DNA of 63,330 nt, filler included, from Hyphochytrium catenoides (taxonomy: Eukaryota > Protista > Hyphochytriomycota): assembly GCA_900088475.1 (NCBI GenBank). It is 10 parts of 10 records of this genome, joined end to end, with 100 filler letters (N's around TTAATTAATTAA, not from the genome) between each part and the next. Parts side by side here need not be neighbours in the genome. Positions count along the whole stretch, not along the records: positions 1,658 to 18,760 come from FLMG01002696.1; 9 more parts are not named here. One strand, written 5' to 3'. The notes under the pieces are model-generated. The model had not been told where the DNA came from. It worked only from the letters and a program-made list of their open reading frames with translations, and ran no database searches. Below are positions 1,658-18,760 of the stretch, piece after piece (position 1 is the stretch's first letter; every line of letters begins with the position of its first letter). A program made the translations under genes and the position numbers.

Positions 1658-1967
1658 GAAGGTGGGCAGAGTAGTGCCCCTTACGCCGGTGCTGCTGCTG
1701 CACTACTGACCGACCTTCCTTGAAGGGCAGCAGCTGGCGATAGGCAGTGTCATTGAAGCGTCTAGCCACTGCTAGAGGAGGCGGTGCTCGATAGTGCCTG
1801 TCTCCCGGAAGATCATACACTATCATCGTCTTAGGACAAGGTAGCGTGTGGGGGCAAGCTAGCGGAGGGTGGCATCGGGAAGGAAGATTAGCAGATCAGT
1901 ATATCTGCGGCGGGTGCTAAGAGGAACGCCCATTGTTACCGCACTGAGAGCAGGCATATAGTGAGGC

Positions 1968-4900
1968 ATGATTGTCATATCGGCGGACGATGCGAAAGGG
2001 ATTCGTGCATGGGACCTACGAGGAGAAGATGCTGGTAACAATAGTAGTAGCCTAAAGATTCTAGAAGGTAGCGCCCCTCAGCAGGGTATCATCCGGGTCC
2101 TCGCTATCTCCTCTGATGCGAGAACGCTTGTTTCTATTGACGATGCGACGATCCGCGTGTGGGATGTGGAAGTGTGGGAGTGCCACACCACCATCGAGAG
2201 CCAAAGTATCGCAAAGAATGGTGTATGGACCGTGGCAGTCTCGGCAGATTGCAAGTACCTCGTGTCAGGCTCTACCGCCAGGCAAGAGGATGGTGGGTTT
2301 CTTAGTGTCTGGGACCTTACAGCCCAGTATTGCGTCAGAACTTTCTGGGGTGAGGCGTCCACTCCTGTCTCCAAAGTGGCCATCTCTGCAGATTGTAAGA
2401 CGGTGGTAGCTTTAGGCTTCTTCTTAGATAACACCGCCTATGTCTGGGATATAGAGACCGGATCCTGTCGAAGAAAACTGGCGAACTTCGCACGTGGCGG
2501 AGTTAATCTGGCGCTCACACCTTGCGGCAAGCTGCTCTCATCATGCGACAAGTCCATCAGTCTCTGGAATTTGGGCGCTGGTAAGTGCGTCAAGACATTT
2601 GTAGGGCACAATGGACCGATCAATAGCATGGCGATCTCCAGCAATGGAAAGTATATGGTCTCCGGCTCTTTTGACCTGACTATTCGCGTGTGGGATCTGG
2701 AGTCGGGCGCCTGCCAAAAGACGCTCCAGGCCTACGAAAGTGGGCTTTGCAGCCTGTCAATTTCTCCTGATGGAAGTAGAGTGATTTCTAGCGCTCTCAA
2801 CGGAGCGATTCGTGCTTGGGATGTGCCAACCACGCTTTGCTTGAGGACCATCTTCACAGGAACAAGAGGCACCTGCCACTTAGCATTGGTTAGCTGGTCC
2901 CAACTTCCCCAGCAAGAGGTCTTCAGGACGGCGGCAGGGCCTACTTCTTCTGGAGGAAACAAGGAAGAAGATACTCATCGCCTGGCTGAGGCAGAAGAGC
3001 GGCGCAAAGCTCGCATGCTCTATTGGTCCCTGTTGAAGGATGGTACGCTACATCGAAATGCAGGTGGTGGTGCGGGATATGAGCCTCTTCTGACAACCAC
3101 GAAGGAGGTGCTCGAGAAGATAGAGGTAGCGGTATTAGTTCCAAGCCTCAGCAAGACTCTAGAGCAGATGACATTGCTCGAACGAAAGCTTGACAGCAAT
3201 GCAGCAGCTCTTTTGAAGCTCGATCGCCAAGTCGCGCGTTTGTCGGCGGTTTCTCGGAACTCCCCGAGAGCCCATGAGGTGCTTCAAGAGAGAAACGATA
3301 GACGCAACGAGCTCTTAAACTCTCTCCAAGAGCAGCTCGATATGCTTCAGTCAAAGAAAGAGCTGAATATGGGGAGGCGGCAAATCAGGAAAAAAGTGAA
3401 GTCAATGATATTGTCTTCTTCGCCCATCGCGGAAGGTCTCCTGCTTCCAGAGCACGAGGCTTCGAACAAGGAAGCGGTAGGCAATTTGCACCCTTTTTGA
3501 TTCTTTCAGATACTCTCAGACGGCGGTGAATAAGATGAGTCTAACAGCAGCCTGTACCTTTCTTCTGCTTCTGCTGTTCGCAGGACCCAACAGTTCGAGA
3601 CCTCGACGAGGACATAGTAGAGCCCTTTAATCGGCTGTTAGTCAACCTTGTCAAAAGTATACTTCCGAAGATTGAGACATTGACAGCTCTTTCTGAGGAG
3701 ATCAACGCCTGGCAGGAACGACAACCCAAACTGCAGGAATTTTCTTGGTACTCTTTGTTGCTGTCATTGCCGCCTGACTTGCTAAACATGTCGGAGACTG
3801 TTGTCCGTCACGAACGGCTCAACAAGGAATTGACTGAAGAGACTACTTCTTATCGAACGAGCCTCGAACTCACGCATGCAGCCATCAAAGCTTACCTCTT
3901 GAAGCTGCGTGAGGCTGTAGAAGCAGAGGACTTCCTCTTTGATCAAGGCCAGCTTGATGCTGAGATTATGGAGGTCCAGACCAGCATCCAGCACTGGAAA
4001 GACATAATAGCACTTGGAACTTCCGCTGTGCAAGCGAAGACAGAAAAGCGAGAGCTGGACGTGCAGATCAAGGCTGCGCGACATGCCTTGAAGCGCTTAA
4101 CCGTTGAGAAAGACATTGCAGAAGATAATGACGAAGATGGCTTGGCCAAGCGCCTTCAATCTCTCGAGTTAGAAAGGAAGACGGAGCTTAACGGTCTTTA
4201 TGACAGGGTAGCACCCTTACTGGAAGTTCTGTCTGACAAGAGGCTAGTCGAATATTTCCCGGAGCTGCTGATAGAAGACAAAAGCCCTGTTCATGCTTCT
4301 AGCGCGATCAATGGAGCTTCAAAGATCATTGACATGCACGTCCGCATCAAGGACTACGAAGCTGTAGAAGGCTTTCCTCTGCATCACAGTGCCAGTCATA
4401 CCAATGTCCAGATCATGAAGGACCCTGACGGCCAACTATGCGTTGTCAAGAAGCTTGTAGGGAGAAAGGAGTTCAGGAAGGAGGCAGAGAGGCTTCACTT
4501 ACTGCGCCATCCGCTCATCGTCCCTCTTCAGCGAATCTTTCTTGATGACAAGGACCCCGAGTCAATCTGCTACATTCAATTGCCATTCTTCAGTAAGGGT
4601 AACGTCCGTCCTTGGGTTTTGCGGATGCAGGACCATACTAGGCGCTTTGGCAAGTTCCAGGAAGGGGTCGAGTGGCTCGAAGTGCAGAATACCTTCCGCC
4701 AGCTTGTCCAGGCTTTGGCTCACATCCATGCCAAGGGAATTGTACACCGTGACCTTAAGCCTGAGAACATCTTGCTGGCAGACTCCGGAAGGATCGCGCT
4801 TTGCGACTTTGGAATCAGCTCAGACGTCGGTCATGTTTTTAGTGCAACCACAACGATGCGAGGGGCCATGACATTGGGCTATGGAGCTCCTGAAGTCTTT

Positions 4901-6631
4901 ACTGGTGGTTGGAGAGATCATCCCTTCGCTGTGGATATGTGGTCTTTGGGCTGTATGATGCTGGAGCTTCTCCTACCACTCCTGCGGACTCGCTTGCCAC
5001 ACATGTTTCGTGACGCAGTAGTGATGCTGGCTGTCGTAGACCCAGAGAGCATTAACTGGCACTCGTTGGCGGATTCTTTTGAAGACGTGCACATGAAGGC
5101 CTACGTGCGAGTATCTTCCCAGCTCTTGCATCTCAAGCCCGAAGAGCGCCCAACTGCTCAAGAGCTTCTGCAGGACGATCTGTTTACACAGGTGTATCCA
5201 AAGTATGACCCCTTGGCCAAGATCAACTCAATCATGAGAAACTTGTCGAAGTGTCGGAGAAAAGGTTCCCCTACTATCCGCGTAACCATTGGCAATGCCC
5301 ACCACCCAGAGGAGGCAAATCATGATGATGATGTTCTCTGCCGGAGTCTGTTGCAGGTCTTCTCCAGCTTAAAAGACGTCCACAGTGCTATTGAAGTTGT
5401 GGCTTCTGATGGTGTACGGCGGCCTTTAGCAGAGGTGATGGAGAGGTTTTTCAATCAGATCGTGCTTCCAAAGTACGGCCTCTTCACCCAAAGACTTTCT
5501 CCTGGAGACGCTAGCGAAAAGGAACCAGCGGAAGAAGGAATTGGGGCTGCTAGAGCCGACCATGCATACCTGCCCGCTCCTACTACCGGAAATCCTGATG
5601 ACTTTTATGCGGTAGGACTGATGATGGCCAAGTGCCTTCTAGAAGGGATCCGGATGCCCATCGTGCTAAATACGTCCTCCTTGGATTACCTCCTTGGCCA
5701 CACACAACAGCCTACGAGCGTAGATCTTTGCTTGGCTTATTTGTCCGAGACCGACAAGGACGAGACATCTCTCTACCGAAACATTCTGCGAGGCAGGCAG
5801 AATGCGATCGAGTACGCATACTCAGTTGGCGCACTGACGGGGTCAGAGTCCGAGCAATATCTCACTGACGAGAACAAGACGAGTGTCATACGTGAGGCGA
5901 TATGGAATAAGCTTGTACGAAGCAGAGCCGCCAGTTTGCAGAAGCTGCGAGAGGGCTTTGGAAAACTGGAAATGGCTGCGGAGCTGCAACTCGTGACAGG
6001 CAAAGAGCTGCACTTTCTCTTCTATGGGACTGACTTTCTTGATCTTAGTGAGCTTCGAAGCTCACTTCACTTCATCGAAGACACTTGGCCGGATAAGAAA
6101 GTGATGAAAAAGCTTCAAGCCTGGCTGAAAGAGTGGCTCTTCTACGTCTCGGATCTGACTTTGCGGCTCCTCGCCTTCAGGTCGTTTGGCCATCTGGTGA
6201 CTCAATGGTCCTCGGAACGCCACCGCATCTCTATCGTACCAAGCGCAGACGAACAGGTTCACTTTGTAGCTGAGGCGCAAGTGATTCAGCTTCCCGCTAC
6301 CTGTGCCTGTTATGAGGCCCTGGACATAAAGCTGCGAGATGAGCTGTTCATAGGCGAAGGAGGATTGAAGAGCTCCTTCGAGAGACGAGCTCAGGTCTCT
6401 CAAGAGGAAATAGCCAAAGTAGTGGCTGCTATGAGGTCGGAGATACGTGCTGGGGGCTGGTTCCGCTGTCCCAACGGCCACTTGTATGCAGTCGGGAACT
6501 GTGGTGCCCCAATAGAGCGGACCAAATGCCCTGAATGCCAGGCAAACATAGGAGGTCAAAGTCATAGAGCGGAAGCCGGTAATGTCCATGCCAATGTAGA
6601 TGAATCCACAGCTCCCGCCTATCCTCAGTAG
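1968..6631 (+). CDS. WD40 repeats + coiled coil + Ser/Thr protein kinase + HECT-like domain + RZ-type zinc finger (~1518 aa; exons 1968-3476 and 3584-6631)
   Basis: ORFs 1968..3500 and 3680..6631 join in frame through a 107-bp phase-0 intron at 3477-3583 (GTAGGC donor, CTAAC branch site at 3541, pyrimidine tract, CAG). WD40: FVGHNGPINSMAISSNGKYMVSGSFDLTIRVWD. Kinase: VVKK, HRDLKPEN, DFG, GYGAPE, DMWSLGC. HECT-like: FFNQIVLPKYGLF, FYAVGLMMAKCLLEG, LTDENK, LREGF, ELHFLFYG. RZ: WFRCPNGHLYAVGNCGAPIERTKCPECQANIGGQSH. The start codon is uncertain. Confidence 0.88.
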
Positions 6632-7440
6632 TAGCAGCCTTCTTCCTCCATCTTCCGATACACTTCTATTAATTGCACAGTAATAGCTGCTGCTGCAAAC
6701 ATTTGCTGCAGCTATTGGTGATCCTCCTCAGCATTATGGAGCCTCGCAGCTAATGAATATGCCTCGTCTACAAGTCGTTGCACTGCCCTACTAGCTTGCG
6801 TCGTGAGACCAGCAAATCACGTGTTCATGCTAAATCTGACAAACCAGGAGGAAGCTTAGAGCATTCCTGTCTAGAGATGGCCACCGCAAGGTTCGTGTGA
6901 AGAAGATCACAGGTGACAAACATGTTTGGACGGACCTTGTCTTAGCACTCGAACACTGCGGCCGCCTGTCTCTTCTGTTTAACAATCGCACTATAAACCT
7001 GGTCGTCAATCATTTGTGGCTATCTCCGCAGCGAGGACGCCCGATCGTAGATTATGAAGAACGTTTCCAAGAAGGGAAAGGGTAGAAAGGCACTGGCGAA
7101 CCTAGCAAACTACGCACTGACGGCCGAAGAGATAACCAAGGACATGACCTTCTCATACCGGTAGAGAGTAGGAGCGGGGAAGATTGATAAAGGAGAATTG
7201 ATACCTTGTAAGCACTAACTAATAAGCAGAGTCTAACTTGCAGAATATTGTTAACTCTCGCGTTTATTATTAGAAAAAGCTTTTGCTGAGACTCTGATCA
7301 CTAGTCTTACATATGAGAAAGGAATGCATGGAATGTCAGTCAGTAGTGGAGATGCTGTCTTCTTCTATCGTCAAACACATAGCATAGAGAGGGGGATAAG
7401 GTGTCTGTTGGTTTTGAAAAGATTGAGAAAGGATATACAC

Positions 7441-9452
<2,012 letters not shown>

Positions 9453-11040
9453 TATTTCTAGAGTCTGCAGGGATGAGCTGCGGTCCTAAAGCTCTGGAGC
9501 TTCCTGTCCGGTCGTGAGTTGAGGCAAGGAAATTGGATAATGAAGCTGAGATCTGAAGGCCCTACCTCTGACGCTGCGTGTAGGCGAGATGGAACAGGGA
9601 ACCGAGAAGGGAGAGGAAAGCAGAGACTAGTCGTGCTGGAAGCTGGAAACAACCTACACGCCGTAGCTGGGGCCATGTCTTTGACTTCCACGCCGTCGAG
9701 AGAGAGTAGAGATGTACCAAGACAGGAAAAGCCTGAGGACAGCGCACTATTGATGGCCAGCTGTCTTGTCATGATGTTTGACTACTGGATACCTTGCTGA
9801 CTCCTGGTATCAGAATGGAAGAGGGCGTGCACCGCTTCACTGGATTCTCTCTTAGGCGCACTCTAGTCATCAAACTGAGGAGGGAGCAGAGGACTGACAG
9901 AGGCACAAGCACGAGTCGCTTCCACGCTTTCTTTCTGGCCTTCTCCTGATCTTCGCAGTGTCAGCCCTTCACACAGCATTGGACTAGAGGCTCAGCCAGG
10001 CGAGCGAGCGGGGCGTTGAACTTGAACTTCAAGTGACCAAATAAACTTGTTGACCGCGCGGCCGCTGTGGGGCTGTGGCCCAGGACTCAGAGATCGTAAC
10101 ATAACTCTATCGGACATCAGGCTAACTAAGCCGAGGGAGGGAGAGAGAGAGAGGGGAGAGGCAGAGTGAGGAGACGTAGGAAAGAGCCTCAAGTGAGGCT
10201 CACAGTCACTGCAAATGAGTTTTCTTCGCCTGTCTCTCTTCCCTATGCTCTGTCTGTAGCGGCCACATCATTGCTCTTAGGCGTTCAAAGTGAAGCACTA
10301 ACCTTGTCTCTCTCTCTCTCTCCCTCTCTCTTGACTCTCTCTCCCTCTGTCTCTCACCCTCCTTCTTCTCGCCGTTCTTATTGGCTCTCTTAAACGTTTC
10401 TCCTCGATTATTTCTCTCTCTCCTCTCTCTCGCTCTCTCGCTCTCTCTCTCTCTCTCTCTTTCTCTCTTTCTCTCTTTCTCTCTCTCCTCTCGCCTCATC
10501 CTTCATAATAATACTCCCTTCGGTGCACGACCATTCTGCCTCTTTTCTCTATTGTCACCCTCGTCTTCCCAGGAAAGCTAAAGTAGTAGTAATAATTAAA
10601 GACCTATTTTCTCTTTTATTGGGCGGAGTTTGGTCCTTGACCTGTGCCCGCCATCCGGTTCTAAATCCTCTGGTACTAAACCTATGTCCAAATAGAACTG
10701 GTGGAACCATTATCTTCGGACATTATTTCAGGTGTGAGGTGGTCACGTTAGGCATATTACTATCACCAAACACCGTTTAGAACTATTGACAAACGCTTGA
10801 TATTTTGGGTACGGCTACTTCGGTATCTTAGGGCTAAGAATGACTAAGAAAGGCGATCTGGCCGCTGATTGGACGGGAAGTATCTTTTTGATTGACCAGC
10901 GCTGGAGCGTGCGCCGGTGCAGTGCACTGGAGAGAGGAGAAGAGAGAGAGACTGCGATTGGAGGATAGCAAGAGAGAGAAAGAGAGAGAAAAAGAGAGAA
11001 AGAGAGGGAGAGGGAGGGAGAGAGAGAGAGAAAGAGCGAA

Positions 11041-11074
<34 letters not shown>

Positions 11075-11626
11075 AGAGAGAGAGANNNNNNNNNNNNNNN
11101 NNNNNNNNNNNNNNNNNNNNNNNGCTGGGTGGGCACACAGAGACGGGTGGGTTAACAGGACTTGTAACTCCCAATTGTGCGTACGACGTCGTTTTTATCT
11201 GGACACAGGTAAACTATACTTGAACTCGGAGAGTTGTACCCCGAGGTACAATGCTGGTTACCGTAACTCGCCTTTTATCTCCTTTTTGAGCTTCAGTTCA
11301 AGGTACATCTTAGGGAATTCTACTCCCTCTCACAGTAAAAAAAGGGAATATGTCCGCTGGGTTTCACTTGGTCTTCTACCTCTCCGAAAGTAAAATCTAC
11401 ACTGCATCAGTTCGACGTAGGCAAATCAAGGGAACTGATAAGATACGGGAACGATGGGGTATCCTAGTTAATAAGTATACGCGTAGAATCTTCTACCTTC
11501 GGCAGAAAGTAAGTTTTCTTGCTGCTCGCGGGCAGATCCCTCAAATCTCGGTCTCTGACGTCTGGAAGACGATGCTGACAGAGATCTAACAGAGATTTAG
11601 TAGCATTTCTCAACATTATTGGCCCC

Positions 11627-11745
11627 AGCTATTAGTTTAGAGACTGGAGACGAGGCCGCCGCAAGCTATTATCTTAGAGTTCTCCAGACTGAAGACGAGG
11701 CCGCAAGCTATTACATTTGAGTTTTCTAGAGTGAGGACGAGGCCG
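11627..11745. repeat. Imperfect tandem repeat, about 3 units of ~40 bp
   Basis: AGCTATTA...AGAG...GACGAGGCCG recurs three times. Confidence 0.7.
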
Positions 11746-13825
11746 AGGAAGGGCCGATCCCTTGGTTCTAACGGCTCAAACAGACGCTGGAGATGTGTGG
11801 GCTCTGCAGGCTACCAGGCCCCTACTACGAGGCCTACATGCCCGTCTGCTGCTGCTGCTGCTGGGCTTGCTGTCCTCATCCAGCCGCCAGGAGAGAAGTT
11901 ACAAGCAACCAAATGACATGAGGACCAAGGTCGATGATCGATATAAGAGTCCTCCTTCAGCTTACTAAGTTCTTCTTCACTGTCAATACTCTCTCCTCTA
12001 TCACCATCCACGTCGATCTCAAGCTCAGTACTTTTGACCGCGTGTCGGGGCCCACCATGATGATGGATAACTATTTATGCCGGGTAGTGGAAGGGCACTT
12101 ACACCACAAAGTAATAGCATTGACAACTATAGTACGTTTTATAGACTTCGTTCAATGGCTCTTGTTTAGCGTCCGCGTCTGAATGATCTCTACTTCGATA
12201 TGCACGGCGTGTGCTCTCTAGACGGCACCGTAGGCGATATGAAGTCTAAGTGAAGTTAAAAATACCGTTGCCAAGATACTCCTAGGGATTGAAGCTCTAA
12301 AAATGTCTCTCGTGCCCCACGCTAGCGATGACCTTCTCCGTAAAGTGGGACAATTATGGGTAGACGTACCCCTTACTTTGAAGCCACGACCCACCCCATG
12401 TCCGGCACGCGCTTGACCACATTCAGATCACCTTCATATGGCCAATGGTGAGCGCACCACTGAGGAAAAAGAACGAAGCTGCGCGTCGAAGAAGCGGCCT
12501 TCGCCAGCAGCTCTCGAAGTCAAAGTCTGCTACGATAATATATGCGTGATCAAACTGATCAGGAGATAGAGGACACAAGCTTGGGAATGATGTTGCTGAT
12601 CTGGTGGTGCAACTATGTATGACAGTGAAAATCAACCAAATCTCTCTCACCCAGGAGGAGAACGAGCAATGAGAAGAGGAGAGAGGTGTTGAGAGGCACC
12701 ACTGAGAAGCGAGCACTAAGCTGCTGAGAAAGATGCACTGAGAACGTGGTGGAGAGATGTACGTCGAGGCGAGGCACTAAAGATAGAGATAAATGTAAGA
12801 ACTTGGTTGTGGGCTCCTCCGCCGTTCATCTGGTGTCTGCCGGTCCAGTTTTGAAGGCAAGGATCGGACAAATTATGCAGAGAGGAAGCGCAGCCACTTC
12901 TTGGTCGTTGCCGATGGCTTATAGAAGATGAGATGACATGCAGCCAACCTGCCTTCAGCAGCAGCATCCTATCCCACCTCAGCCGCATTCATCTTCCTAC
13001 TAATAAAACAGCTCTACAATGAAGAATTTGTCGCGGCGGAGACTCTCATTTCCTGTGCCATCATTAGCGGAGGTCGCGGAAGAAAGCTCCAAAATTCTTC
13101 AACCACGTGATCTAAGGGGAAATCTCTGAAAAGATAACTTTTCTTTGGGCCGTACTCTCTCCTCCTCTTTCCACTCCTGTGCGGAGGTATCTTTTGTTGA
13201 AGCAGCAGGACGCTTCTTCTGGCCAAGAGGGATGAAGGACTATGTGCTGCAAAAATCCATTATTGGCAGCGTAAGCGCAGATTGTTCTATTACGTGGTTC
13301 CTTCTTCCCTGTCTGTCCACGTTGCCAGAGCAAGACGTAGCTCTTTTCAGTAGACAGTTCTATCTTCCCTTCTATAGTCATCTTCCACCTAGCTCTTCGT
13401 CCTTCCCTCCTGCGCCTCCGCTACTTTGTATCTAGACTCTACGAAGGCTCACCCTCGGCAGGTCCTACCGCGCTACCCGTTACCTAGCAATCCTCCTCAC
13501 TCACTCCTTCATTATGTACTAGACAATTCCCATGTCCTCATCCTTTACTCTACGAGGTAAGCCAATCGCCAGCCACGCTCTGAGCTTTATCTGGCATCTG
13601 ATGGAAAGATCATCCACTGCTGCTATTGTCATGGTCACTTCTGTGGTTAGGCCGGGCCAGCTCTTTTAGCCTTTCAGTGGGTTTATTCTCCCATCACGGT
13701 CAGCCGAAGTGGCTTCTGCTCTTGGACCGATAAGAGAACATAGCTCTCTCTATGTTGTTGATGAGTGCTGGCTGTACCTGTTCCACCGCATCCCCTGATG
13801 CGTAAAGGCGGCCGCCATGCCTTCC

Positions 13826-16258
13826 TTACTCTGCCTCCTGACCACCTCTCTCCTTTACGTAGCAGGTCTCAAACTCAATTTCTGACGCCACCATGACCAG
13901 CTGGTTGGGTCGATGCAGCAGACTGAAGACGCTGCGCGCACTGTTAAACATCAAGGTGCCTAGAGTATCTAGGACCAGACTCAGTGGAGAGCGAATGATC
14001 CGCTGCAAGGGAGGAGAGGCAGCTGTTGACTGAACCTGGAGACCATTGACTAGCTCATGTTCTGACGACTTGGTTCCCAGGTTCTTGAGGACCACAAAGT
14101 AAACAACCCAGCTGACCTTCACCGCTAATAATGACAGGAAGTACCGAAGAAGCCACTTCTGTCGCACTGCCACTGGTTGAATGAGAGCGTCTTGGACGAG
14201 GAAAGCAGAGACAACGGTGGCAATGGTTGAGAGAAGCAGTAGGTACCTAAGGGCAAGAGAAGATAAGCATGACACTTCTTCCTAGAGTCAAGCAAGGAGA
14301 AGAATATTGATGAGGAAAAGCTTGATAGGCTGCAGCTTACCTTCCGTCCCACTGAAGAAGAAGCCCTCCAAACACTGAAAGTTGCACGGAAGCGAGAGAT
14401 ATGGTGAGGAACTCGAAAGAGTGGCTCACAAGAGAAAGAAGCTTCGTGGAGCTGCGCAGGAGGAGAACCGCGTTCACAGCAACATTAAAAGTGAGGAAGA
14501 GAACGTCCCAGGCCAACGTAGCATTCAGAGTTCGTAGCAGGGCATGAAGAAGCAGGGCAACAATCGTTCCAGCAGAGAGCGCAGAGTTCTCCAGCCACCG
14601 GGCTGCTTGTTTTTTCCTCTGCCCGTCCTTTTCCTCCCGCCGGGTACGATATTGTCCAGAGTCCAAGGCATCTTTTGCCTTCGACCGATTCTGAGGCGCT
14701 ACCTTGTCGTTAGATCGCGCATAGATTATTCTTCTTCTCAGGCAGTGGCTAAGGGTATCATCTTTCTCCACAGTCAGGGTGGTTAACAATGGTCTGAGTA
14801 CGAAGGCCTTGCGATAGCCCTCTCGCCTGTCAGACCCAAAGAGTGGAAGAGATGGCAGTATTATTAGTGGATACATTCTCACTGTCGTCGAACGGAGGAA
14901 GGAGAGATTGCGAACAAGCGAGGAGGTATTGCGTCTAGATTAGAGAAAGAGAGAAGCCGTTGCGGCTCTTTGTGATGGCAGAAGATCGAGCATGGGAAGA
15001 AAGAGTGGTGGGACTCCTTACTACCTAGTTCTGCTGATAAGCGCAGCGCCAGTTCCCGCAGTATCATGCCCAACTTCACCGCCGAGGATTGTCTGCGCTG
15101 CACCTGCATCTTTCAATTGGACTGGCCATCTCATGACAGTAAAGCGCGCGGCGCTCGGTCGCTTGGCACCTTTCCAAACCATGGCAGTGTACCGCCGGAG
15201 CAGCTGCAACATTAGAACGCCCATGGTCGCCATAGAATCAGCCGCCACTAACCATGGGCGGAGAGGAACATTGAAGACCACGAGCTCAAGCTGCTGCAGG
15301 TCTGGTGAGGTGTTCGAGTAGAGTGAACCTGCAAGCCTAGGAGGGCAACAGGGACAGCCAGCAGTCTTCATCAGTATTCAGGCTAAAGGACGAACAGAAG
15401 AGGAACTCTTTTGACATCATTAAGAGTGGGAGGAGACAAACGGCTTTACCAGAGCAGATAGAAGCCAGCGAACAAGCTGCCGCAAACTACTATCAGTGTT
15501 GCCGCCTTCGACGCCGCGATCTGGGGCGTGGCGTCCACAATGAAGATTGTGAAGATGCCGGAGATGGAACCTGTGATCAGTGCCGCGGACCGCGTGAAGT
15601 CTCTCCGGACGAAACCCTCATAGAGCATGAAATGCAGCAGAGGAGCAATGGAGTGGAAGACGAAGAACCAGCCCTGAAATTGCCTGAACAGTGTCTTCAA
15701 GAGGCGAACATGGGCTTCTGAGCAGAGAGATGTACCATAAAGGCCGAGAAGAATGGCGCTACAAGCCCTTAGACCCTGTGTTCCCCCGCCATAGAGCATC
15801 AAAGTGAACATCAACAGCCCAAGCGTCAAGGAGAGTCCGACCAAAGCTGTATACAAGCCTGACTGCCTTAGCGCACTATACCACGCCAGCAAGACTGAGG
15901 GGAGAGCAGCAATGGCAATAGTTTCTCTGGGGTTGAGCGCCGCGGGTAGGTAGTCTGGCACTGGCGAGATGGTCCAGCAGGACCCTACTACTACGGCCAT
16001 GATGATCAACAGAGAAGCCCCAGTCACCTGCCACGACTCGCAGTCATGCTGATGATGATGGAGAAGGGCAGGAAGAAGCTATAGAAGAGAGACAGAAAGG
16101 ACGCCAGCGCGTGCCAGATCTTGATAATGATGAGTCTTCTCCTTGTTCACCCCTGGGCTGCTGCTGCTGCCAGGCACTTGGTCTTTGAGGAGGAGGCGGG
16201 CGGCGTGCGCTGTGTCTCTTCTCCATGCACCTTCTTCTCCTCCTCCTCGCTGCTCCAT
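13826..16258 (-). CDS. Multi-pass membrane protein of unknown function with two similar modules
   Basis: Four hydrophobic ORFs splice in frame through phase-2 GT-AG introns: exons 16027-15450, 15336-15025, 14826-14341 and 14246-13826. The first exon (ATG 16258) is tentative, and the 3' end could be the stop at 13826 or a donor at 13829. Confidence 0.6.
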
Positions 16259-16700
16259 AGCTAATAGGAGGAGACAAGACTGAGGAGGGAGGAGAGTCCA
16301 TCCAAGCAGTAGTGCAGACTCTTTCTTTATCTCTTTCCTCTTTTCTCTGTTGCAGCGGCAGCAGCATCCATTGTGACGTCTGTGTAACGGATGCTGATAC
16401 ATTATCTTAGGGATGGTTTCCTACTCTGTCTGTTAGTCTTGAGGGAAGGTGGGGGGGGAAGGGGCCTCCTTCCTTTCAGAATCACGTCCTGTATTTCAGG
16501 AACTGTACGGTAAAGCCCGTCTGGATTCAGGAGCTGTCGAGTAACATTTATAATATGGGGAGGGTTTGGTTGTTTGGTTGGTCGAAGGGGAGGTGTGGGG
16601 GGTGCTTTGGGAGAGGGGGGCGTGTGGGGGGCTTCCTCTAGGGTTTCACTGCATAGATTCTTCTTCCTCTCTACAGGTACAGAGGGGTAATAACAGTAAA

Positions 16701-17082
16701 TAAGGGTTGTGCCACTATTTTGCCCAACCTAAGCAAGAGTAATTGGCGTCTGTTCCTACGACACCCCATGGACAAACCGTCTTGAGATCTGCTAGCCCTA
16801 AAGTTCAGGGGCAACATAATTTCAGGGGCACCTTCTAACTCCCAGCCGTCGAGGAGTTATGTCTACAATGGTGAAAGCTGTTTTTCTCCTCTCAAAAGAG
16901 CTGCTACTGTTTCGCCCATGAAGGACATTAGCACAGGATATTGTGACCTTTCAACTCTTTCATAGCTGGAGTAGTGCTCAGGCACACTGGATTCCCCCCA
17001 ACTTACACGTACTCGTAGTAGAGCAATATGTTAGGGGTGAGCATAATTGTAGCAGGGCAAAAAATGATGGCACAGCCCTTTA
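16701..17082. mobile_element. Putative MITE (~380 bp) with imperfect ~25-bp terminal inverted repeats
   Basis: AAGGGTTGTGCCACTATTTTGCCC (16702-16725) is an imperfect reverse complement of GGGCAAAAAATGATGGCACAGCCCTT (17055-17080). TA lies at or next to both ends, and there is no internal ORF. Confidence 0.5.
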
Positions 17083-17535
17083 GTTAAGCAGCAAGCCGGC
17101 TGTCGCGGTGCCGGTGTCGTCCTTGGCCGCCTTTTATTGAGAACTAAGGAAAAGTGTGTTGCGTGTGGTTTGGGGATATCGTGGTTCGCTGGGGAACCAG
17201 CGGATTATGGATCAACTTCGTTCTAAAGCTATTAGTTTATGGTCTAGTTTGGTCACTTTAAATCCCCTCAAGTTGCAAGGCTTCTCCTTCTCTTACAGTT
17301 TCAGTGGCAGGACTTTTCATTCTCCTTGCGCCTTTGGTGGTGGTGGGGCGGGCTTTGGCTGAGGGAGAATTTGCGCACTAATACTAGCTTGCAACCACAC
17401 TAATTATTTATAAAAGGTTGGAAGCCGCTATTAGTGCGGTGTGTGGAGCTTGTAGTGCGAGTCATGCGGGTCTCCAGGCTCGATAGCAGCTCTTCCTAGT
17501 GAGGGACCGAGTGTCCCATCATTCTGGGGCCTACT

Positions 17536-17597
17536 TAGCGGTAATTTTTGTTGAGGAGTGCTGGGTAGCGGTAATTTTTGTTGAGGAGTGCTGGGTA
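17536..17597. repeat. Perfect 30-bp tandem duplication
   Basis: TAGCGGTAATTTTTGTTGAGGAGTGCTGGG occurs twice in tandem. Confidence 0.9.
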
Positions 17598-17933
17598 TTA
17601 GTAAGTGTTCCTAGGAGTGGGTGGTGAGATGATGATGAGGGAGCAGTATATGAGAGGATAACAACACATATCCAGCGCTGTAATGCACAGATGGTGCGCA
17701 ATCGCCTTCCTTTGCCACGGGCAATTCGCGAGGATGTTCTACAGCAACAGCAACAACTGCAGCAGATCCGGCGATGGAGGAGAGGTGGAGCCGCAGTTCA
17801 GAGGTTTTAGTATAGACCTTAAGAGCTGGTACGTTTATTAACAGTAGGGTAGTATAGAGATTTGTAGTAGTACTCTTTTTTAATGCTTTCTAGTAGTAAG
17901 TTTCTAAAAGTGGTCAATAAAAAGTAGATAATG

Positions 17934-17981
17934 ACTGGAAGATTGAAGTATGTTGCCGCAACATTACTTCAACCTTCCAGT
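17934..17981. repeat. Near-perfect palindrome/hairpin, ~23-bp stem
   Basis: ACTGGAAGATTGAAGTATGTTGC-C-GCAACATTACTTCAACCTTCCAGT, with one mismatch and one bulge. Confidence 0.85.
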
Positions 17982-17999
17982 TCCTTCTCGTACTGTATA

Positions 18000-18256
18000 C
18001 AGTCGACTACCCGGTTGAGTTTACACGGGGTTGAGTTGTCACCCGGTGCCGTTGACATATTTTGGCTGGAACCATCTCATACTTCTACGTTCTGAAAAAG
18101 TATGGCTTTATTGCGGGGAATGAGTTCCCACGGCGTGAACATGCGAAAAGCAGCAAAAAGACATGTTTTGACGTCCTCTTCCTCCTGAGTGGTCACCCAC
18201 TTGAGTTGACAAAATTGGTCGGAAACGGCATGACAACTCAACCGGGTGGTCTACTG
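18000..18256. mobile_element. Tc1/mariner-pogo-type MITE (257 bp) with TA target-site duplication
   Basis: TA|CAGTCGACTACCCGGTTGAGTT ... AACTCAACCGGGTGGTCTACTG|TA gives 22-bp TIRs with 2 mismatches and CAGT termini. TTGAGTTG motifs recur internally. Confidence 0.8.
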
Positions 18257-18760
18257 TATACTAGTAGGCGTGAGTCTGTATAATAGCGTCTCGTCGCAGA
18301 TGCGATATGATGTGGGGTTGGAGTCGGTGTGAGAAGAGATGATGGTCCTTTTGTGGTTATCGAGAGGCGGCCGGTCCGTGACATGGCAATTATGGCTCTG
18401 AGTTCCGGCGAGGGATGCATCTTCTACTGTTTTGACGTTCTCTAAAGTAATAAGTTGAGACGATCTAAGTGATGATGATAAAGGCTGGCGTTTGGTTGGA
18501 TGGCAGCACAGTATTGGCTGTATCGACTGTTCGGCGATATGAATGGAGGAGGGAGCCTTCCGGCGGGATCTTGCGGCCGCCGGCGGTTGGGAAGATGATA
18601 GTCTTTCTTATGGGCGTAGTTGGTCGTGAAGAAGGGATGAGGATGGTGGGGTGTGGTTTCTTGTTGAAAAGGTTCTGGTTGTTGGCGTGGTTCTGGTGCA
18701 GTGTCGGCGGGTGCTGGAGGCTGGAAGAGAGGGAACGAGATGGGGGAGGTCCTCGTCCTC

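What the first reader, a model, noticed from the sequence alone, without database searches (positions are those of the whole stretch)
1968..6631. Single-chain WD40 - coiled coil - kinase - HECT-like - RZ-finger protein: candidate protist immune sensor and ubiquitin ligase
Seen: two ORFs join through one clean intron into a ~1518-aa protein. It has about 6-7 WD40 blades, a long coiled-coil-like region, a kinase (~4355-5185), a HECT-like domain (~5438-6350) and a terminal RZ finger. Established: RZ fingers characterise the animal defence ligases RNF213 (ubiquitylates bacterial LPS) and ZNFX1 (antiviral), and WD40 propellers are the ligand sensors of fungal HET/NWD receptors. Inference: a sensor, oligomerisation, phosphorylation and ubiquitylation module in one chain, possibly for cell-autonomous defence. 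I do not recognise this architecture from any characterised protein.
Basis: partly seen in the sequence, partly recalled or inferred. Interest (0 to 1): 0.88.

Follow-up and report, generated by a model that had tools for sequence, protein, structure and literature searches.

The report
WD40 kinase–HECT–RZ ubiquitin ligase gene
This is a real gene from a soil eukaryote for a 1518-residue protein that joins a WD40 propeller, a long helical linker, a protein kinase, a HECT-fold domain without the usual catalytic cysteine, and a complete RZ zinc finger; it belongs to a little-noticed, uncharacterised family whose ubiquitin-transfer site probably sits in the RZ finger.

Summary
Two ORFs (1968-3476, 3584-6631) join across a 107-nt GT..AG intron into a 1518-aa protein. 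It has a 7-bladed WD40 propeller, about 480 aa of helical linker, a Ser/Thr kinase, a bilobal HECT fold and a C-terminal RZ finger. All Pfam hits exceed their cut-offs and two AlphaFold models are confident.

No RNA data cover the splice. Intron signals, neighbouring GH1 introns of the same style, and coding statistics favour one gene.

The architecture is not unique. Pkinase-HECT-RZ is an invariant core in more than 20 relatives: Mesostigma viride (at least six loci), Myrmecia bisecta, and many metagenome fragments. Lagenidium giganteum and Amoeboaphelidium occidentale entries show kinase and HECT only. N-termini vary (ankyrin, WD40, none). A 2013 HECT survey noted divergent HECTs with "unusual protein kinase domains".

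What looks new:
- The HECT domain has Glu (E1400) at the canonical catalytic-Cys position.
- The RZ finger keeps all six RNF213 catalytic and zinc residues at exact spacing.

Best reading: a kinase-coupled, RZ-type transthiolating E3 that uses a pseudo-HECT scaffold. The immune-sensor idea is untested, and the WD40 repeats do not resemble fungal NWD/HET-E repeats.

The parts
1968..3476 (+). Exon 1 (503 codons): start ATG, WD40 propeller and the first part of the helical linker
   Evidence: ORF. An in-frame TGA lies at 1962-1964. The upstream stretch 1660-1965 scores non-coding in all frames.
1968..2891 (+). Seven-bladed WD40 propeller (aa 1-308)
   Evidence: Pfam WD40, 6 stretches, 1.3e-33. 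WD-like dipeptides at aa 15, 65, 115, 159, 199, 241 and 283. The AlphaFold model has 28 strands, and the last strand (304-308) could complete blade 1. Repeats are 20-54% alike with no DNA tandem repeat.
2961..3434 (+). Long helices of the linker (aa 332-357, 378-431, 433-483)
   Evidence: DSSP of the AlphaFold model, pLDDT 77-91 over aa 391-480.
3477..3583 (+). Proposed intron, 107 nt: GTAGGC donor, CTAAC at 3541-3545, pyrimidine tract, CAG acceptor
   Evidence: Sequence. It scores non-coding. GH1 introns 8775-8702 and 7935-7848 on the minus strand have the same style. Not confirmed by RNA.
3584..6631 (+). Exon 2 (1015 codons plus TAG stop)
   Evidence: The frame is open from 3545, and the first in-frame ATG is only at 3788. 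The stretch 3584-3787 scores as coding in frame. The C-terminus ends where homologues end.
3584..4354 (+). Second part of the linker; lineage-specific except for its last third
   Evidence: No homologue for aa 1-290 of exon 2 in the 5.8-billion-protein search. Residues 151-290 (nt 4034-4453) align to Mesostigma P0160 residues 628-762 at E 4e-8, including the conserved FPELL motif.
4355..5185 (+). Ser/Thr protein kinase domain without a glycine-rich loop
   Evidence: Pfam Pkinase 1.8e-36, profile positions 43-263. K792 (nt 4448), E803, H891-R892-D893 (nt 4745-4753), N898, D911-F912-G913 (nt 4805-4813) and A938-P939-E940 are present and conserved in the family. No GxGxxG is present. The best solved relative is a MAP2K-like protein, 9gmp, at E 3e-20.
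5261..6346 (+). Bilobal HECT-fold domain (aa 1063-1424)
   Evidence: Pfam HECT 2.6e-14. AlphaFold pLDDT is mostly above 90. Foldseek matches HUWE1, NEDD4, E6AP and UBR5 at E about 1e-13 and AFDB HECT clusters over query residues 1-362. In the profile search UBR5 is the best hit, at E 1e-14.
6272..6274 (+). Codon at the position of the canonical HECT catalytic cysteine: GAG, Glu1400
   Evidence: In the HMMER alignment to UBR5, Cys2768 falls in an insertion with no family column. The spacing between the two LP motifs places position 6 at E1400. The family has E/D/S/N/R/G or a gap there.
6302..6304 (+). Family-specific cysteine C1410 (LPxxC), at the N-cap of the last C-lobe helix
   Evidence: Cys in 18 of 21 aligned sequences. 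It is the only conserved Cys in the C-lobe. DSSP places it between strand 341-344 and helix 351-361 of the model.
6434..6586 (+). RZ zinc finger with a complete catalytic set
   Evidence: Pfam ZnF_RZ-type 3.4e-21. The residues are C1465, H1469, C1476 (nt 6500), C1485, C1488 and H1497. Their spacing is C-x3-H-x6-C-x8-C-x2-C-x8-H, identical to human RNF213 C4505, H4509, C4516, C4525, C4528 and H4537. In the family they are kept in 19, 16, 18, 20, 20 and 18 of 20 sequences. The profile matches RNF213 structures at E 4e-11.

Best explanation
One spliced gene encodes a 1518-aa kinase-coupled ubiquitin ligase of a conserved but uncharacterised Pkinase-HECT-RZ family.

Proposed mechanism:
- The N-terminal 7-bladed WD40 propeller binds the target. 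In relatives this slot holds ankyrin repeats or nothing (inferred).
- The roughly 480-aa helical linker spaces or oligomerises the protein (inferred).
- The kinase has every catalytic residue but no glycine-rich loop. It phosphorylates the target or the ligase itself and so gates ubiquitylation (inferred).
- The HECT-fold domain has lost the canonical nucleophile (shown). It serves as the scaffold that docks E2~ubiquitin (inferred).
- The C-terminal RZ finger keeps the zinc ligands, the nucleophile Cys and the general-base His of RNF213 and ZNFX1 (shown). It accepts ubiquitin by transthiolation and passes it to the substrate (inferred).
For: Gene and domains.

One gene rather than two:
- Intron signals match those of two neighbouring GH1 introns.
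- Coding score is 0.165 for 3584-3787, which lies before any in-frame ATG. Non-coding controls reach at most 0.132.
- Mesostigma relatives have the same layout: a repeat domain, a linker of about 460 aa, then the kinase (P0160: ankyrin 43-307, kinase from 767).

Family: every sufficiently long relative carries Pkinase, HECT and RZ in that order.

HECT fold.

Canonical Cys absent:
- UBR5 Cys2768 has no counterpart column in the family profile.
- The ungapped LP..LP spacing puts Glu, Asn, Arg or Gly there.

RZ finger complete, with exact spacing.

Literature on RZ fingers:
- The RZ Cys is the transthiolation nucleophile in RNF213 (bioRxiv 10.1101/2021.05.10.443411; PMC11549300) and in ZNFX1 (bioRxiv 10.1101/2025.09.05.674436).
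- In both proteins a separate module docks the E2: the CTD in RNF213 and the Z-RING in ZNFX1.
- In both, a nucleotide-binding module in the same chain controls activity.

Precedent for a dead HECT beside an active zinc finger: G2E3 (PMC3673628).

Kinase residues are conserved across the family.
Against: - No transcript data exist, so the splice, and therefore the WD40 fusion, is unproven.
- No biochemical data exist for any family member.
- A family-specific Cys (C1410, 18 of 21) sits in the C-lobe and could be an alternative or relay nucleophile.
- Five relatives have a Cys within three residues of the canonical position.
- The RZ finger is modelled with low confidence (pLDDT 40-65), and no coordinates were available to judge its position relative to the N-lobe.
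- E2 binding by the N-lobe was not tested.
- Lack of a glycine-rich loop is common in pseudokinases.
Confidence: 0.55

Rival explanations
1. The HECT domain is itself the active ligase. It would use the family-specific cysteine C1410 (LPxxC) as nucleophile, or relay ubiquitin between C1476 of the RZ finger and C1410 as MYCBP2 does. In the first case the RZ finger would serve mainly in substrate or E2 recognition.
For: C1410 is conserved in 18 of 21 sequences and is the only conserved C-lobe cysteine. The HECT fold, including the C-lobe, is kept with pLDDT above 90 across very distant taxa, which argues for a constrained function. Cysteine relay in MYCBP2 is established knowledge (mentioned).
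Against: C1410 lies at the strand-to-helix turn at the far end of the strand from the canonical hairpin tip. Three family members lack it while keeping the RZ hexad. In RNF213 and ZNFX1 the RZ cysteine alone is the mapped nucleophile.
Confidence: 0.2
2. There are two adjacent genes, not one: a 510-aa WD40-plus-helices protein (1968-3500) and a 947-aa helical-kinase-HECT-RZ protein starting at ATG 3788. The 'clean intron' would be a coincidence.
For: 31 GT..AG pairs keep the frame, so an in-frame join is expected by chance. Several relatives (P0016, P0022) have no recognisable N-terminal repeat domain and are about 1060 aa long. No RNA evidence is available. No orthologue with WD40 upstream was found.
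Against: The stretch 3584-3787 upstream of the first ATG scores as coding in the right frame, while the intron does not. The intron has donor, CTAAC branch, pyrimidine tract and acceptor like the two verified GH1 introns nearby. Only 288 nt would separate the stop from the next start. Mesostigma relatives show the same plan of repeat domain, linker of about 460 aa and kinase.
Confidence: 0.2
3. This is the first reader's reading: a cell-autonomous immune sensor. The WD40 propeller would detect a pathogen ligand, the coiled coil would oligomerise, and the kinase and ligase would signal or tag the invader, as RNF213 does with LPS.
For: Both characterised RZ proteins act in innate defence. N-terminal repeat domains are swapped within the family (WD40, ankyrin, clathrin-propeller plus ankyrin), and Mesostigma has at least six loci. 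Such variation and expansion are frequent in immune gene families (inference).
Against: There is no STAND NTPase, TIR, death-fold or other immune signalling domain. The WD repeats are diverged and not tandem-homogenised. The kinase resembles MAP2K, GSK3 and CIPK types rather than IRAK or RIPK. Repeat domains ahead of HECT domains are ordinary substrate receptors. No expression or infection data exist.
Confidence: 0.15

Closest known systems
RNF213 and ZNFX1 (RZ-finger transthiolating E3 ligases of animals)
   Same: The RZ finger has the CHCC zinc site, the loop cysteine and the downstream histidine at identical spacing. In both animal proteins the RZ finger works together with a separate E2-docking module and a nucleotide-binding module in the same chain.
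   Different: There is no dynein-like AAA core, RING, CTD or CBM20 (RNF213), and no SF1 helicase, NFX1 fingers or Z-RING (ZNFX1). Here the neighbours are a HECT fold and a protein kinase. It shares a domain with these proteins and is not an orthologue of either.
HECT E3 ligases, especially class IV (UBR5; G2E3 and the 'GL-Bikonta' group of Grau-Bove et al. 2013, PMC3673628)
   Same: It has the bilobal HECT fold. UBR5 is the best profile hit. GL-Bikonta members of Naegleria and Ectocarpus were reported with 'unusual protein kinase domains', and G2E3 has a non-functional HECT next to active zinc fingers.
   Different: The canonical Cys of the LPxAHTC loop is replaced by Glu. The C-terminal tail is replaced by a linker and an RZ finger.
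Uncharacterised Pkinase-HECT-RZ proteins: Mesostigma viride EP00899 P007084, P019273, P017184, P007931/P007938 and P026981, and Myrmecia bisecta KAK9810317.1. Lagenidium giganteum DBA03693.1 and Amoeboaphelidium occidentale KAI3655530.1 (partial) show kinase and HECT only.
   Same: Kinase and HECT lie in the same order in all of these, and the RZ finger follows in the Mesostigma and Myrmecia proteins. Identity is 31-47% in the HECT-RZ part and up to 53% in the kinase. The pre-kinase FPELL segment is shared.
   Different: Their N-termini carry ankyrin repeats, clathrin-propeller plus ankyrin, a USP7-like fusion, or nothing recognisable. None found so far has a WD40 propeller.
Fungal HET-E/NWD STAND receptors with WD40 sensors
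   Same: They have a WD40 propeller at one end of a multidomain protein.
   Different: There is no NACHT/NB-ARC domain. The propeller is N-terminal rather than C-terminal. The repeats are not highly similar tandem copies.

Membership tests
HECT-type E3 ligase | Bilobal HECT fold (N-lobe plus C-lobe) | tested here: met
   Pfam HECT 54 bits against a cut-off of 23.9. AlphaFold pLDDT 82. Foldseek E about 1e-13 to HUWE1, NEDD4 and E6AP over about 400 columns.
HECT-type E3 ligase | Catalytic cysteine in the LPxAHTC hairpin of the C-lobe | tested here: not met
   UBR5 Cys2768 aligns to an insertion with no family column. The position is Glu1400 in the window and E/D/S/N/R/G or a gap in relatives.
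HECT-type E3 ligase | E2 binding by the N-lobe and thioester formation | not testable with these tools
   This needs biochemistry or a complex model. No coordinates or multimer prediction were available.
RZ-type transthiolating E3 (RNF213/ZNFX1 finger) | ZnF_RZ profile match | tested here: met
   PF20173, 75.1 bits against a cut-off of 27. The family profile hits RNF213 structures at E 4e-11.
RZ-type transthiolating E3 (RNF213/ZNFX1 finger) | CHCC zinc ligands, loop nucleophile Cys and general-base His at RNF213 spacing | tested here: met
   C1465, H1469, C1476, C1485, C1488 and H1497 have offsets 0, 4, 11, 20, 23 and 32. These equal the offsets of RNF213 residues 4505, 4509, 4516, 4525, 4528 and 4537. 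They are conserved in 16-20 of 20 relatives.
RZ-type transthiolating E3 (RNF213/ZNFX1 finger) | Demonstrated E2-to-E3 transthiolation | not testable with these tools
   Biochemical assay required.
RNF213 or ZNFX1 orthologue | AAA/dynein-like core (RNF213) or SF1 helicase with NFX1 fingers (ZNFX1) | tested here: not met
   No such Pfam hits at E up to 1 in either exon product.
Eukaryotic protein kinase (active) | VAIK Lys, alpha-C Glu, HRD, catalytic Asn, DFG and APE | tested here: met
   K792, E803, H891-R892-D893, N898, D911-F912-G913 and A938-P939-E940. Pfam Pkinase 126 bits.
Eukaryotic protein kinase (active) | Glycine-rich loop GxGxxG | tested here: not met
   The Pfam match starts at profile position 43. 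No conserved glycine motif precedes the VAIK Lys in any of the 18 aligned family members.
WD40 beta-propeller | Seven four-stranded blades | tested here: met
   Seven WD-like motifs. The AlphaFold model has 28 strands, with pLDDT mostly above 85 over aa 40-300.
Fungal NWD/HET-E type STAND receptor | NACHT/NB-ARC NTPase and highly similar tandem WD repeats | tested here: not met
   No NTPase hit. Repeats are 20-54% identical, and TRF finds no repeat array.
GL-Bikonta divergent HECT group (Grau-Bove 2013) | Highly divergent HECT related to UBR5/G2E3, some members with kinase domains | tested here: inconclusive
   UBR5 is the top profile hit (57 against about 50 bits for other HECTs) and a kinase is present. 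The Naegleria and Ectocarpus sequences of that study were not available for comparison.

The most novel reading that the evidence does not exclude
The Pkinase-HECT-RZ triad could be a distinct, ancient class of RZ-type transthiolating E3. In it a catalytically dead HECT scaffold docks the E2, taking the role of the RNF213 CTD or the ZNFX1 Z-RING. The RZ finger carries the thioester, possibly relaying through the conserved C-lobe cysteine. A fused protein kinase provides nucleotide-dependent control, taking the role of the AAA or helicase modules. Interchangeable N-terminal receptors (WD40 here, ankyrin in Mesostigma) would aim it at lineage-specific targets, which could include invaders.
Probability: 0.3. 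Interest if true: 0.8.

Novelty: new variant of a known kind. Interest (0 to 1): 0.6.

Why it matters
RZ fingers have been worked out in only two proteins, both animal immune ligases. In each, the finger depends on a different E2-docking module and on a nucleotide-binding engine.

A family spread over green algae, with kinase-HECT relatives in an oomycete and an aphelid, would show two things if the proposed mechanism holds. First, the RZ finger is a portable catalytic module that is much older than animal immunity. Second, a HECT fold can be reused as a non-catalytic E2 dock. It would also provide a compact, expressible system of about 790 aa for studying RZ catalysis and kinase-ubiquitin coupling in one chain.

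If the HECT cysteine variant (C1410) proves active instead, that would be a new HECT active-site geometry. Either result is directly testable with standard assays.

Tried and rejected
- **RNA evidence:** no RNA run was listed for 1700-6700. The only RNA-labelled run holds a 239-nt contig at 6279-6517 and a generic kinase match, and shows no joint.
- **Orthologues with the same N-terminus:** the linker (exon 2, aa 1-290) found nothing. Exon 1 found only generic WD40 proteins at 25-39% identity. The Atlas search of exon 1 was also generic.
- **Metagenome contig scan:** returned only generic kinase matches at 27-39% identity.
- **Contexts of the closest relatives (P0003, P0004):** no DNA was available. 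The P0002 contig starts inside the gene.
- **Single-sequence search of a relative's HECT against the PDB:** found nothing, so only the profile works.
- **Upstream exon (1795-1840 spliced to 1966):** considered, then rejected. It would duplicate a propeller strand, the region scores non-coding, and the model already has 28 strands.
- **NWD/HET-E analogy:** rejected.
- **Organism:** could not be named. Run labels are coded, and the closest named relative of the kinase is the aphelid Amoeboaphelidium occidentale at 53% identity, which is not decisive.
- **Literature:** searches for kinase-HECT, HECT-RZ and similar terms found no paper.

Full report
**1. Gene model**

The piece 1658-18760 has two long plus-strand ORFs, 1968..3500 and 3680..6631.
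- Exon 1 (1968-3476) is exactly 503 codons.
- GT lies at 3477-3478 and AG at 3582-3583.
- Exon 2 (3584-6631) continues in frame for 1015 codons to a TAG stop.
- The product is 1518 aa.

The join itself is weak evidence, because 31 GT..AG pairs in this region keep the frame. Three observations favour the proposed intron.
- It has a GTAGGC donor, a CTAAC branch at 3541-3545 (38 nt before the acceptor), a pyrimidine tract and a CAG acceptor.
- Two introns of the neighbouring GH1 gene are fixed by conserved GH1 motifs (LFER|FGDRVKYW and TENG|CSVP). They are built the same way: 8775-8702 (74 nt, GTAAGA, CTAAC) and 7935-7848 (88 nt, GTACGA, TTAAC).
- A codon-usage log-odds score trained on the rest of the gene gives 0.165 for 3584-3787. 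That stretch lies between the acceptor and the first in-frame ATG at 3788. In-frame windows average 0.215 (sd 0.079), and non-coding controls reach at most 0.132. The intron scores -0.08.

The 5' end is plausible as it stands.
- The 310 nt upstream of the ATG score non-coding in all frames.
- An in-frame TGA lies 6 nt upstream of the ATG.
- The propeller model is complete without further residues.

No RNA evidence could be obtained. DNA runs of the coded "organism A" cover the locus with two haplotypes. One contig runs 948 nt beyond the left edge of the piece. A soil metagenome holds an identical 251-nt fragment. I put about 0.75-0.8 on a single spliced gene.

**2. Domains**

Pfam gives the following, all above the curated cut-offs:

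| Domain | E-value | Residues |
|---|---|---|
| WD40 (6 stretches) | 1.3e-33 | exon 1 |
| Pkinase | 1.8e-36 | exon-2 aa 295-534 |
| HECT | 2.6e-14 | exon-2 aa 623-851 (profile 4-226 of 306) |
| ZnF_RZ-type | 3.4e-21 | exon-2 aa 951-1001 |

- **Propeller and linker.** An AlphaFold model of exon 1 with a WD40 alignment has pLDDT 80.6. It shows 28 strands, which makes seven blades. The last strand (304-308) is available to close the first blade. Three long helices follow, at 332-357, 378-431 and 433-483. The roughly 480-aa linker is rich in Leu, Glu, Ala, Ser, Lys and Arg.
- **Kinase.** It keeps K792, E803, HRD 891-893, N898, DFG 911-913 and APE 938-940, but no glycine-rich loop. This pattern holds in all 18 aligned family members. 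Its nearest solved relatives are MAP2K-like, GSK3 and CIPK kinases.
- **HECT-RZ part.** An AlphaFold model built on 21 family sequences has pLDDT 82 and pTM 0.77. Foldseek matches entire HECT domains in the PDB and in AFDB clusters at E about 1e-13 to 1e-14. These matches cover model residues 1-362 and so both lobes.

**3. A conserved family**

An exhaustive HMMER search with the HECT-RZ part found about 30 representative clusters that cover the HECT region. Many more hits matched the RZ finger only.

Every relative long enough to judge carries Pkinase, HECT and RZ in that order.

Named sources:
- Mesostigma viride, at least six loci.
- Myrmecia bisecta.
- Lagenidium giganteum: the entry shows kinase and HECT only.
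- Amoeboaphelidium occidentale: a partial entry with kinase and HECT only, 53% identical in the kinase and the closest named relative.

An ESM Atlas cluster of 71 mostly streptophyte Pkinase-plus-HECT proteins is the nearest cluster by features.

N-termini differ among relatives: ankyrin repeats, clathrin-propeller plus ankyrin, a USP7-like fusion, or nothing recognisable. No other WD40 member was found.

The conserved core extends about 100 aa upstream of the kinase and includes an FPELL motif. Mesostigma P0160 has ankyrin at 43-307 and its kinase from 767. The window has WD40 at 1-308 and its kinase from about 770-798. The overall plan is therefore shared.

**4. The HECT domain lacks its canonical nucleophile**

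The family profile aligns best to UBR5. In that alignment UBR5 reads LPTANTC-ISRLYVPLY, and its Cys2768 falls in an insertion with no family column.

Canonical HECTs have 12 residues between the two LP motifs (LPxAHTCFNxLxLP). Mesostigma paralogues keep both LP motifs at that spacing with no gap, and have Glu, Asn, Arg or Gly at the Cys position. In the window the position is Glu1400, codon GAG at 6272.

A different cysteine, C1410 in LPxxC, is kept in 18 of 21 sequences. It lies after the following strand, at the N-cap of the last helix.

**5. The RZ finger is complete**

C1465, H1469, C1476, C1485, C1488 and H1497 have offsets 0, 4, 11, 20, 23 and 32. These equal the offsets of human RNF213 C4505, H4509, C4516, C4525, C4528 and H4537.

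Across 20 family sequences they are kept in 19, 16, 18, 20, 20 and 18.

What the literature shows:
- In RNF213 the CHCC residues bind zinc, and the loop Cys accepts ubiquitin from the E2, which docks on the separate CTD. ATP binding to the AAA core activates the enzyme (bioRxiv 10.1101/2021.05.10.443411; PMC11549300).
- In ZNFX1 the equivalent Cys1860 is the mapped nucleophile, and the E2 docks on a Z-RING. The authors point to nucleotide-dependent modules as a shared feature of RZ ligases (bioRxiv 10.1101/2025.09.05.674436).

**6. Most likely mechanism**

Shown here:
- a HECT fold without the canonical Cys;
- a catalytically complete RZ finger about 55 residues downstream of that fold;
- a kinase with intact catalytic residues, always fused upstream.

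Inferred:
- The pseudo-HECT domain docks E2~Ub.
- The RZ loop cysteine takes the thioester and the histidine assists transfer.
- The kinase gates or primes the reaction.
- The WD40 propeller selects the target.
- The helical linker spaces or oligomerises the protein.

G2E3, which has a non-functional HECT next to active zinc fingers, is a precedent (PMC3673628).

Rivals:
- C1410 acts as an alternative or relay nucleophile.
- There are two separate genes.
- The protein has a defence role.

The defence idea has only analogy behind it.
- No STAND NTPase or other immune signalling domain is present.
- The WD repeats are 20-54% alike, with no tandem DNA repeat.

**7. Comparison with what is known, and novelty**

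The protein shares a domain with RNF213 and ZNFX1 but is not an orthologue of either. It has the HECT fold but fails the catalytic-Cys criterion.

Grau-Bove et al. [quoted passage not shown] UBR5 being the best profile hit fits that group. Identity with it could not be tested.

No paper in the searchable library describes a kinase-HECT-RZ architecture.

My assessment is that the family is known to databases, was glimpsed once in the literature, and is uncharacterised. Three points appear to be new:
- the WD40-bearing member;
- the recognition that the triad is invariant;
- the pairing of a missing HECT cysteine with a complete RZ finger.

I rate it a new variant of a known kind, with interest 0.6.

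Noticed in passing
window 7600-9452, minus strand: This is a multi-exon glycoside hydrolase family 1 (beta-glucosidase) gene with a likely N-terminal signal peptide ([22 protein letters not shown]). It lies convergent with the ligase gene. Two of its introns (8775-8702 and 7935-7848) could be placed exactly from conserved GH1 motifs, and they define the local intron style (short, with a CTAAC or TTAAC branch).
   Followed up: partly
window 10160-11400: This region is rich in CT/GA microsatellite and contains an assembly gap (N run 11086-11123). It produces spurious Ser/Leu- and Arg/Glu-rich ORFs on both strands.
   Followed up: no
window 13826-16027, minus strand: Several hydrophobic ORFs (149, 181 and 193 aa) look like exons of a multi-pass membrane protein. 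They have no Pfam hit, and the Atlas search gave only generic membrane-protein neighbours.
   Followed up: partly
window 1660-6700: The DNA runs of the source organism carry two haplotypes. Paired contigs show 0 versus 4-9 differences at 2813-2961 and 6573-6695, and there are many single-base variants plus a 3-nt insertion after 3774 and a 3-nt deletion at 5017, both in frame. The organism is therefore heterozygous, or the sample is mixed. An identical 251-nt fragment occurs in a soil metagenome.
   Followed up: partly
window 4734-4778: The HRDLKPEN-coding stretch of the kinase attracts contigs from other loci and other organisms (loose ends on both sides in X1, X2 and X6). This points to further kinase genes sharing the motif. 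The depth bump there is not a sign of copy number.
   Followed up: no
P0012 / P0161 (Mesostigma viride Mv25119): One Mesostigma family member is predicted as a fusion of a complete USP7-like deubiquitinase (MATH, UCH, USP7 C-terminal domains) with the kinase-HECT-RZ core. This is either a remarkable writer-eraser fusion or a merged gene model.
   Followed up: no
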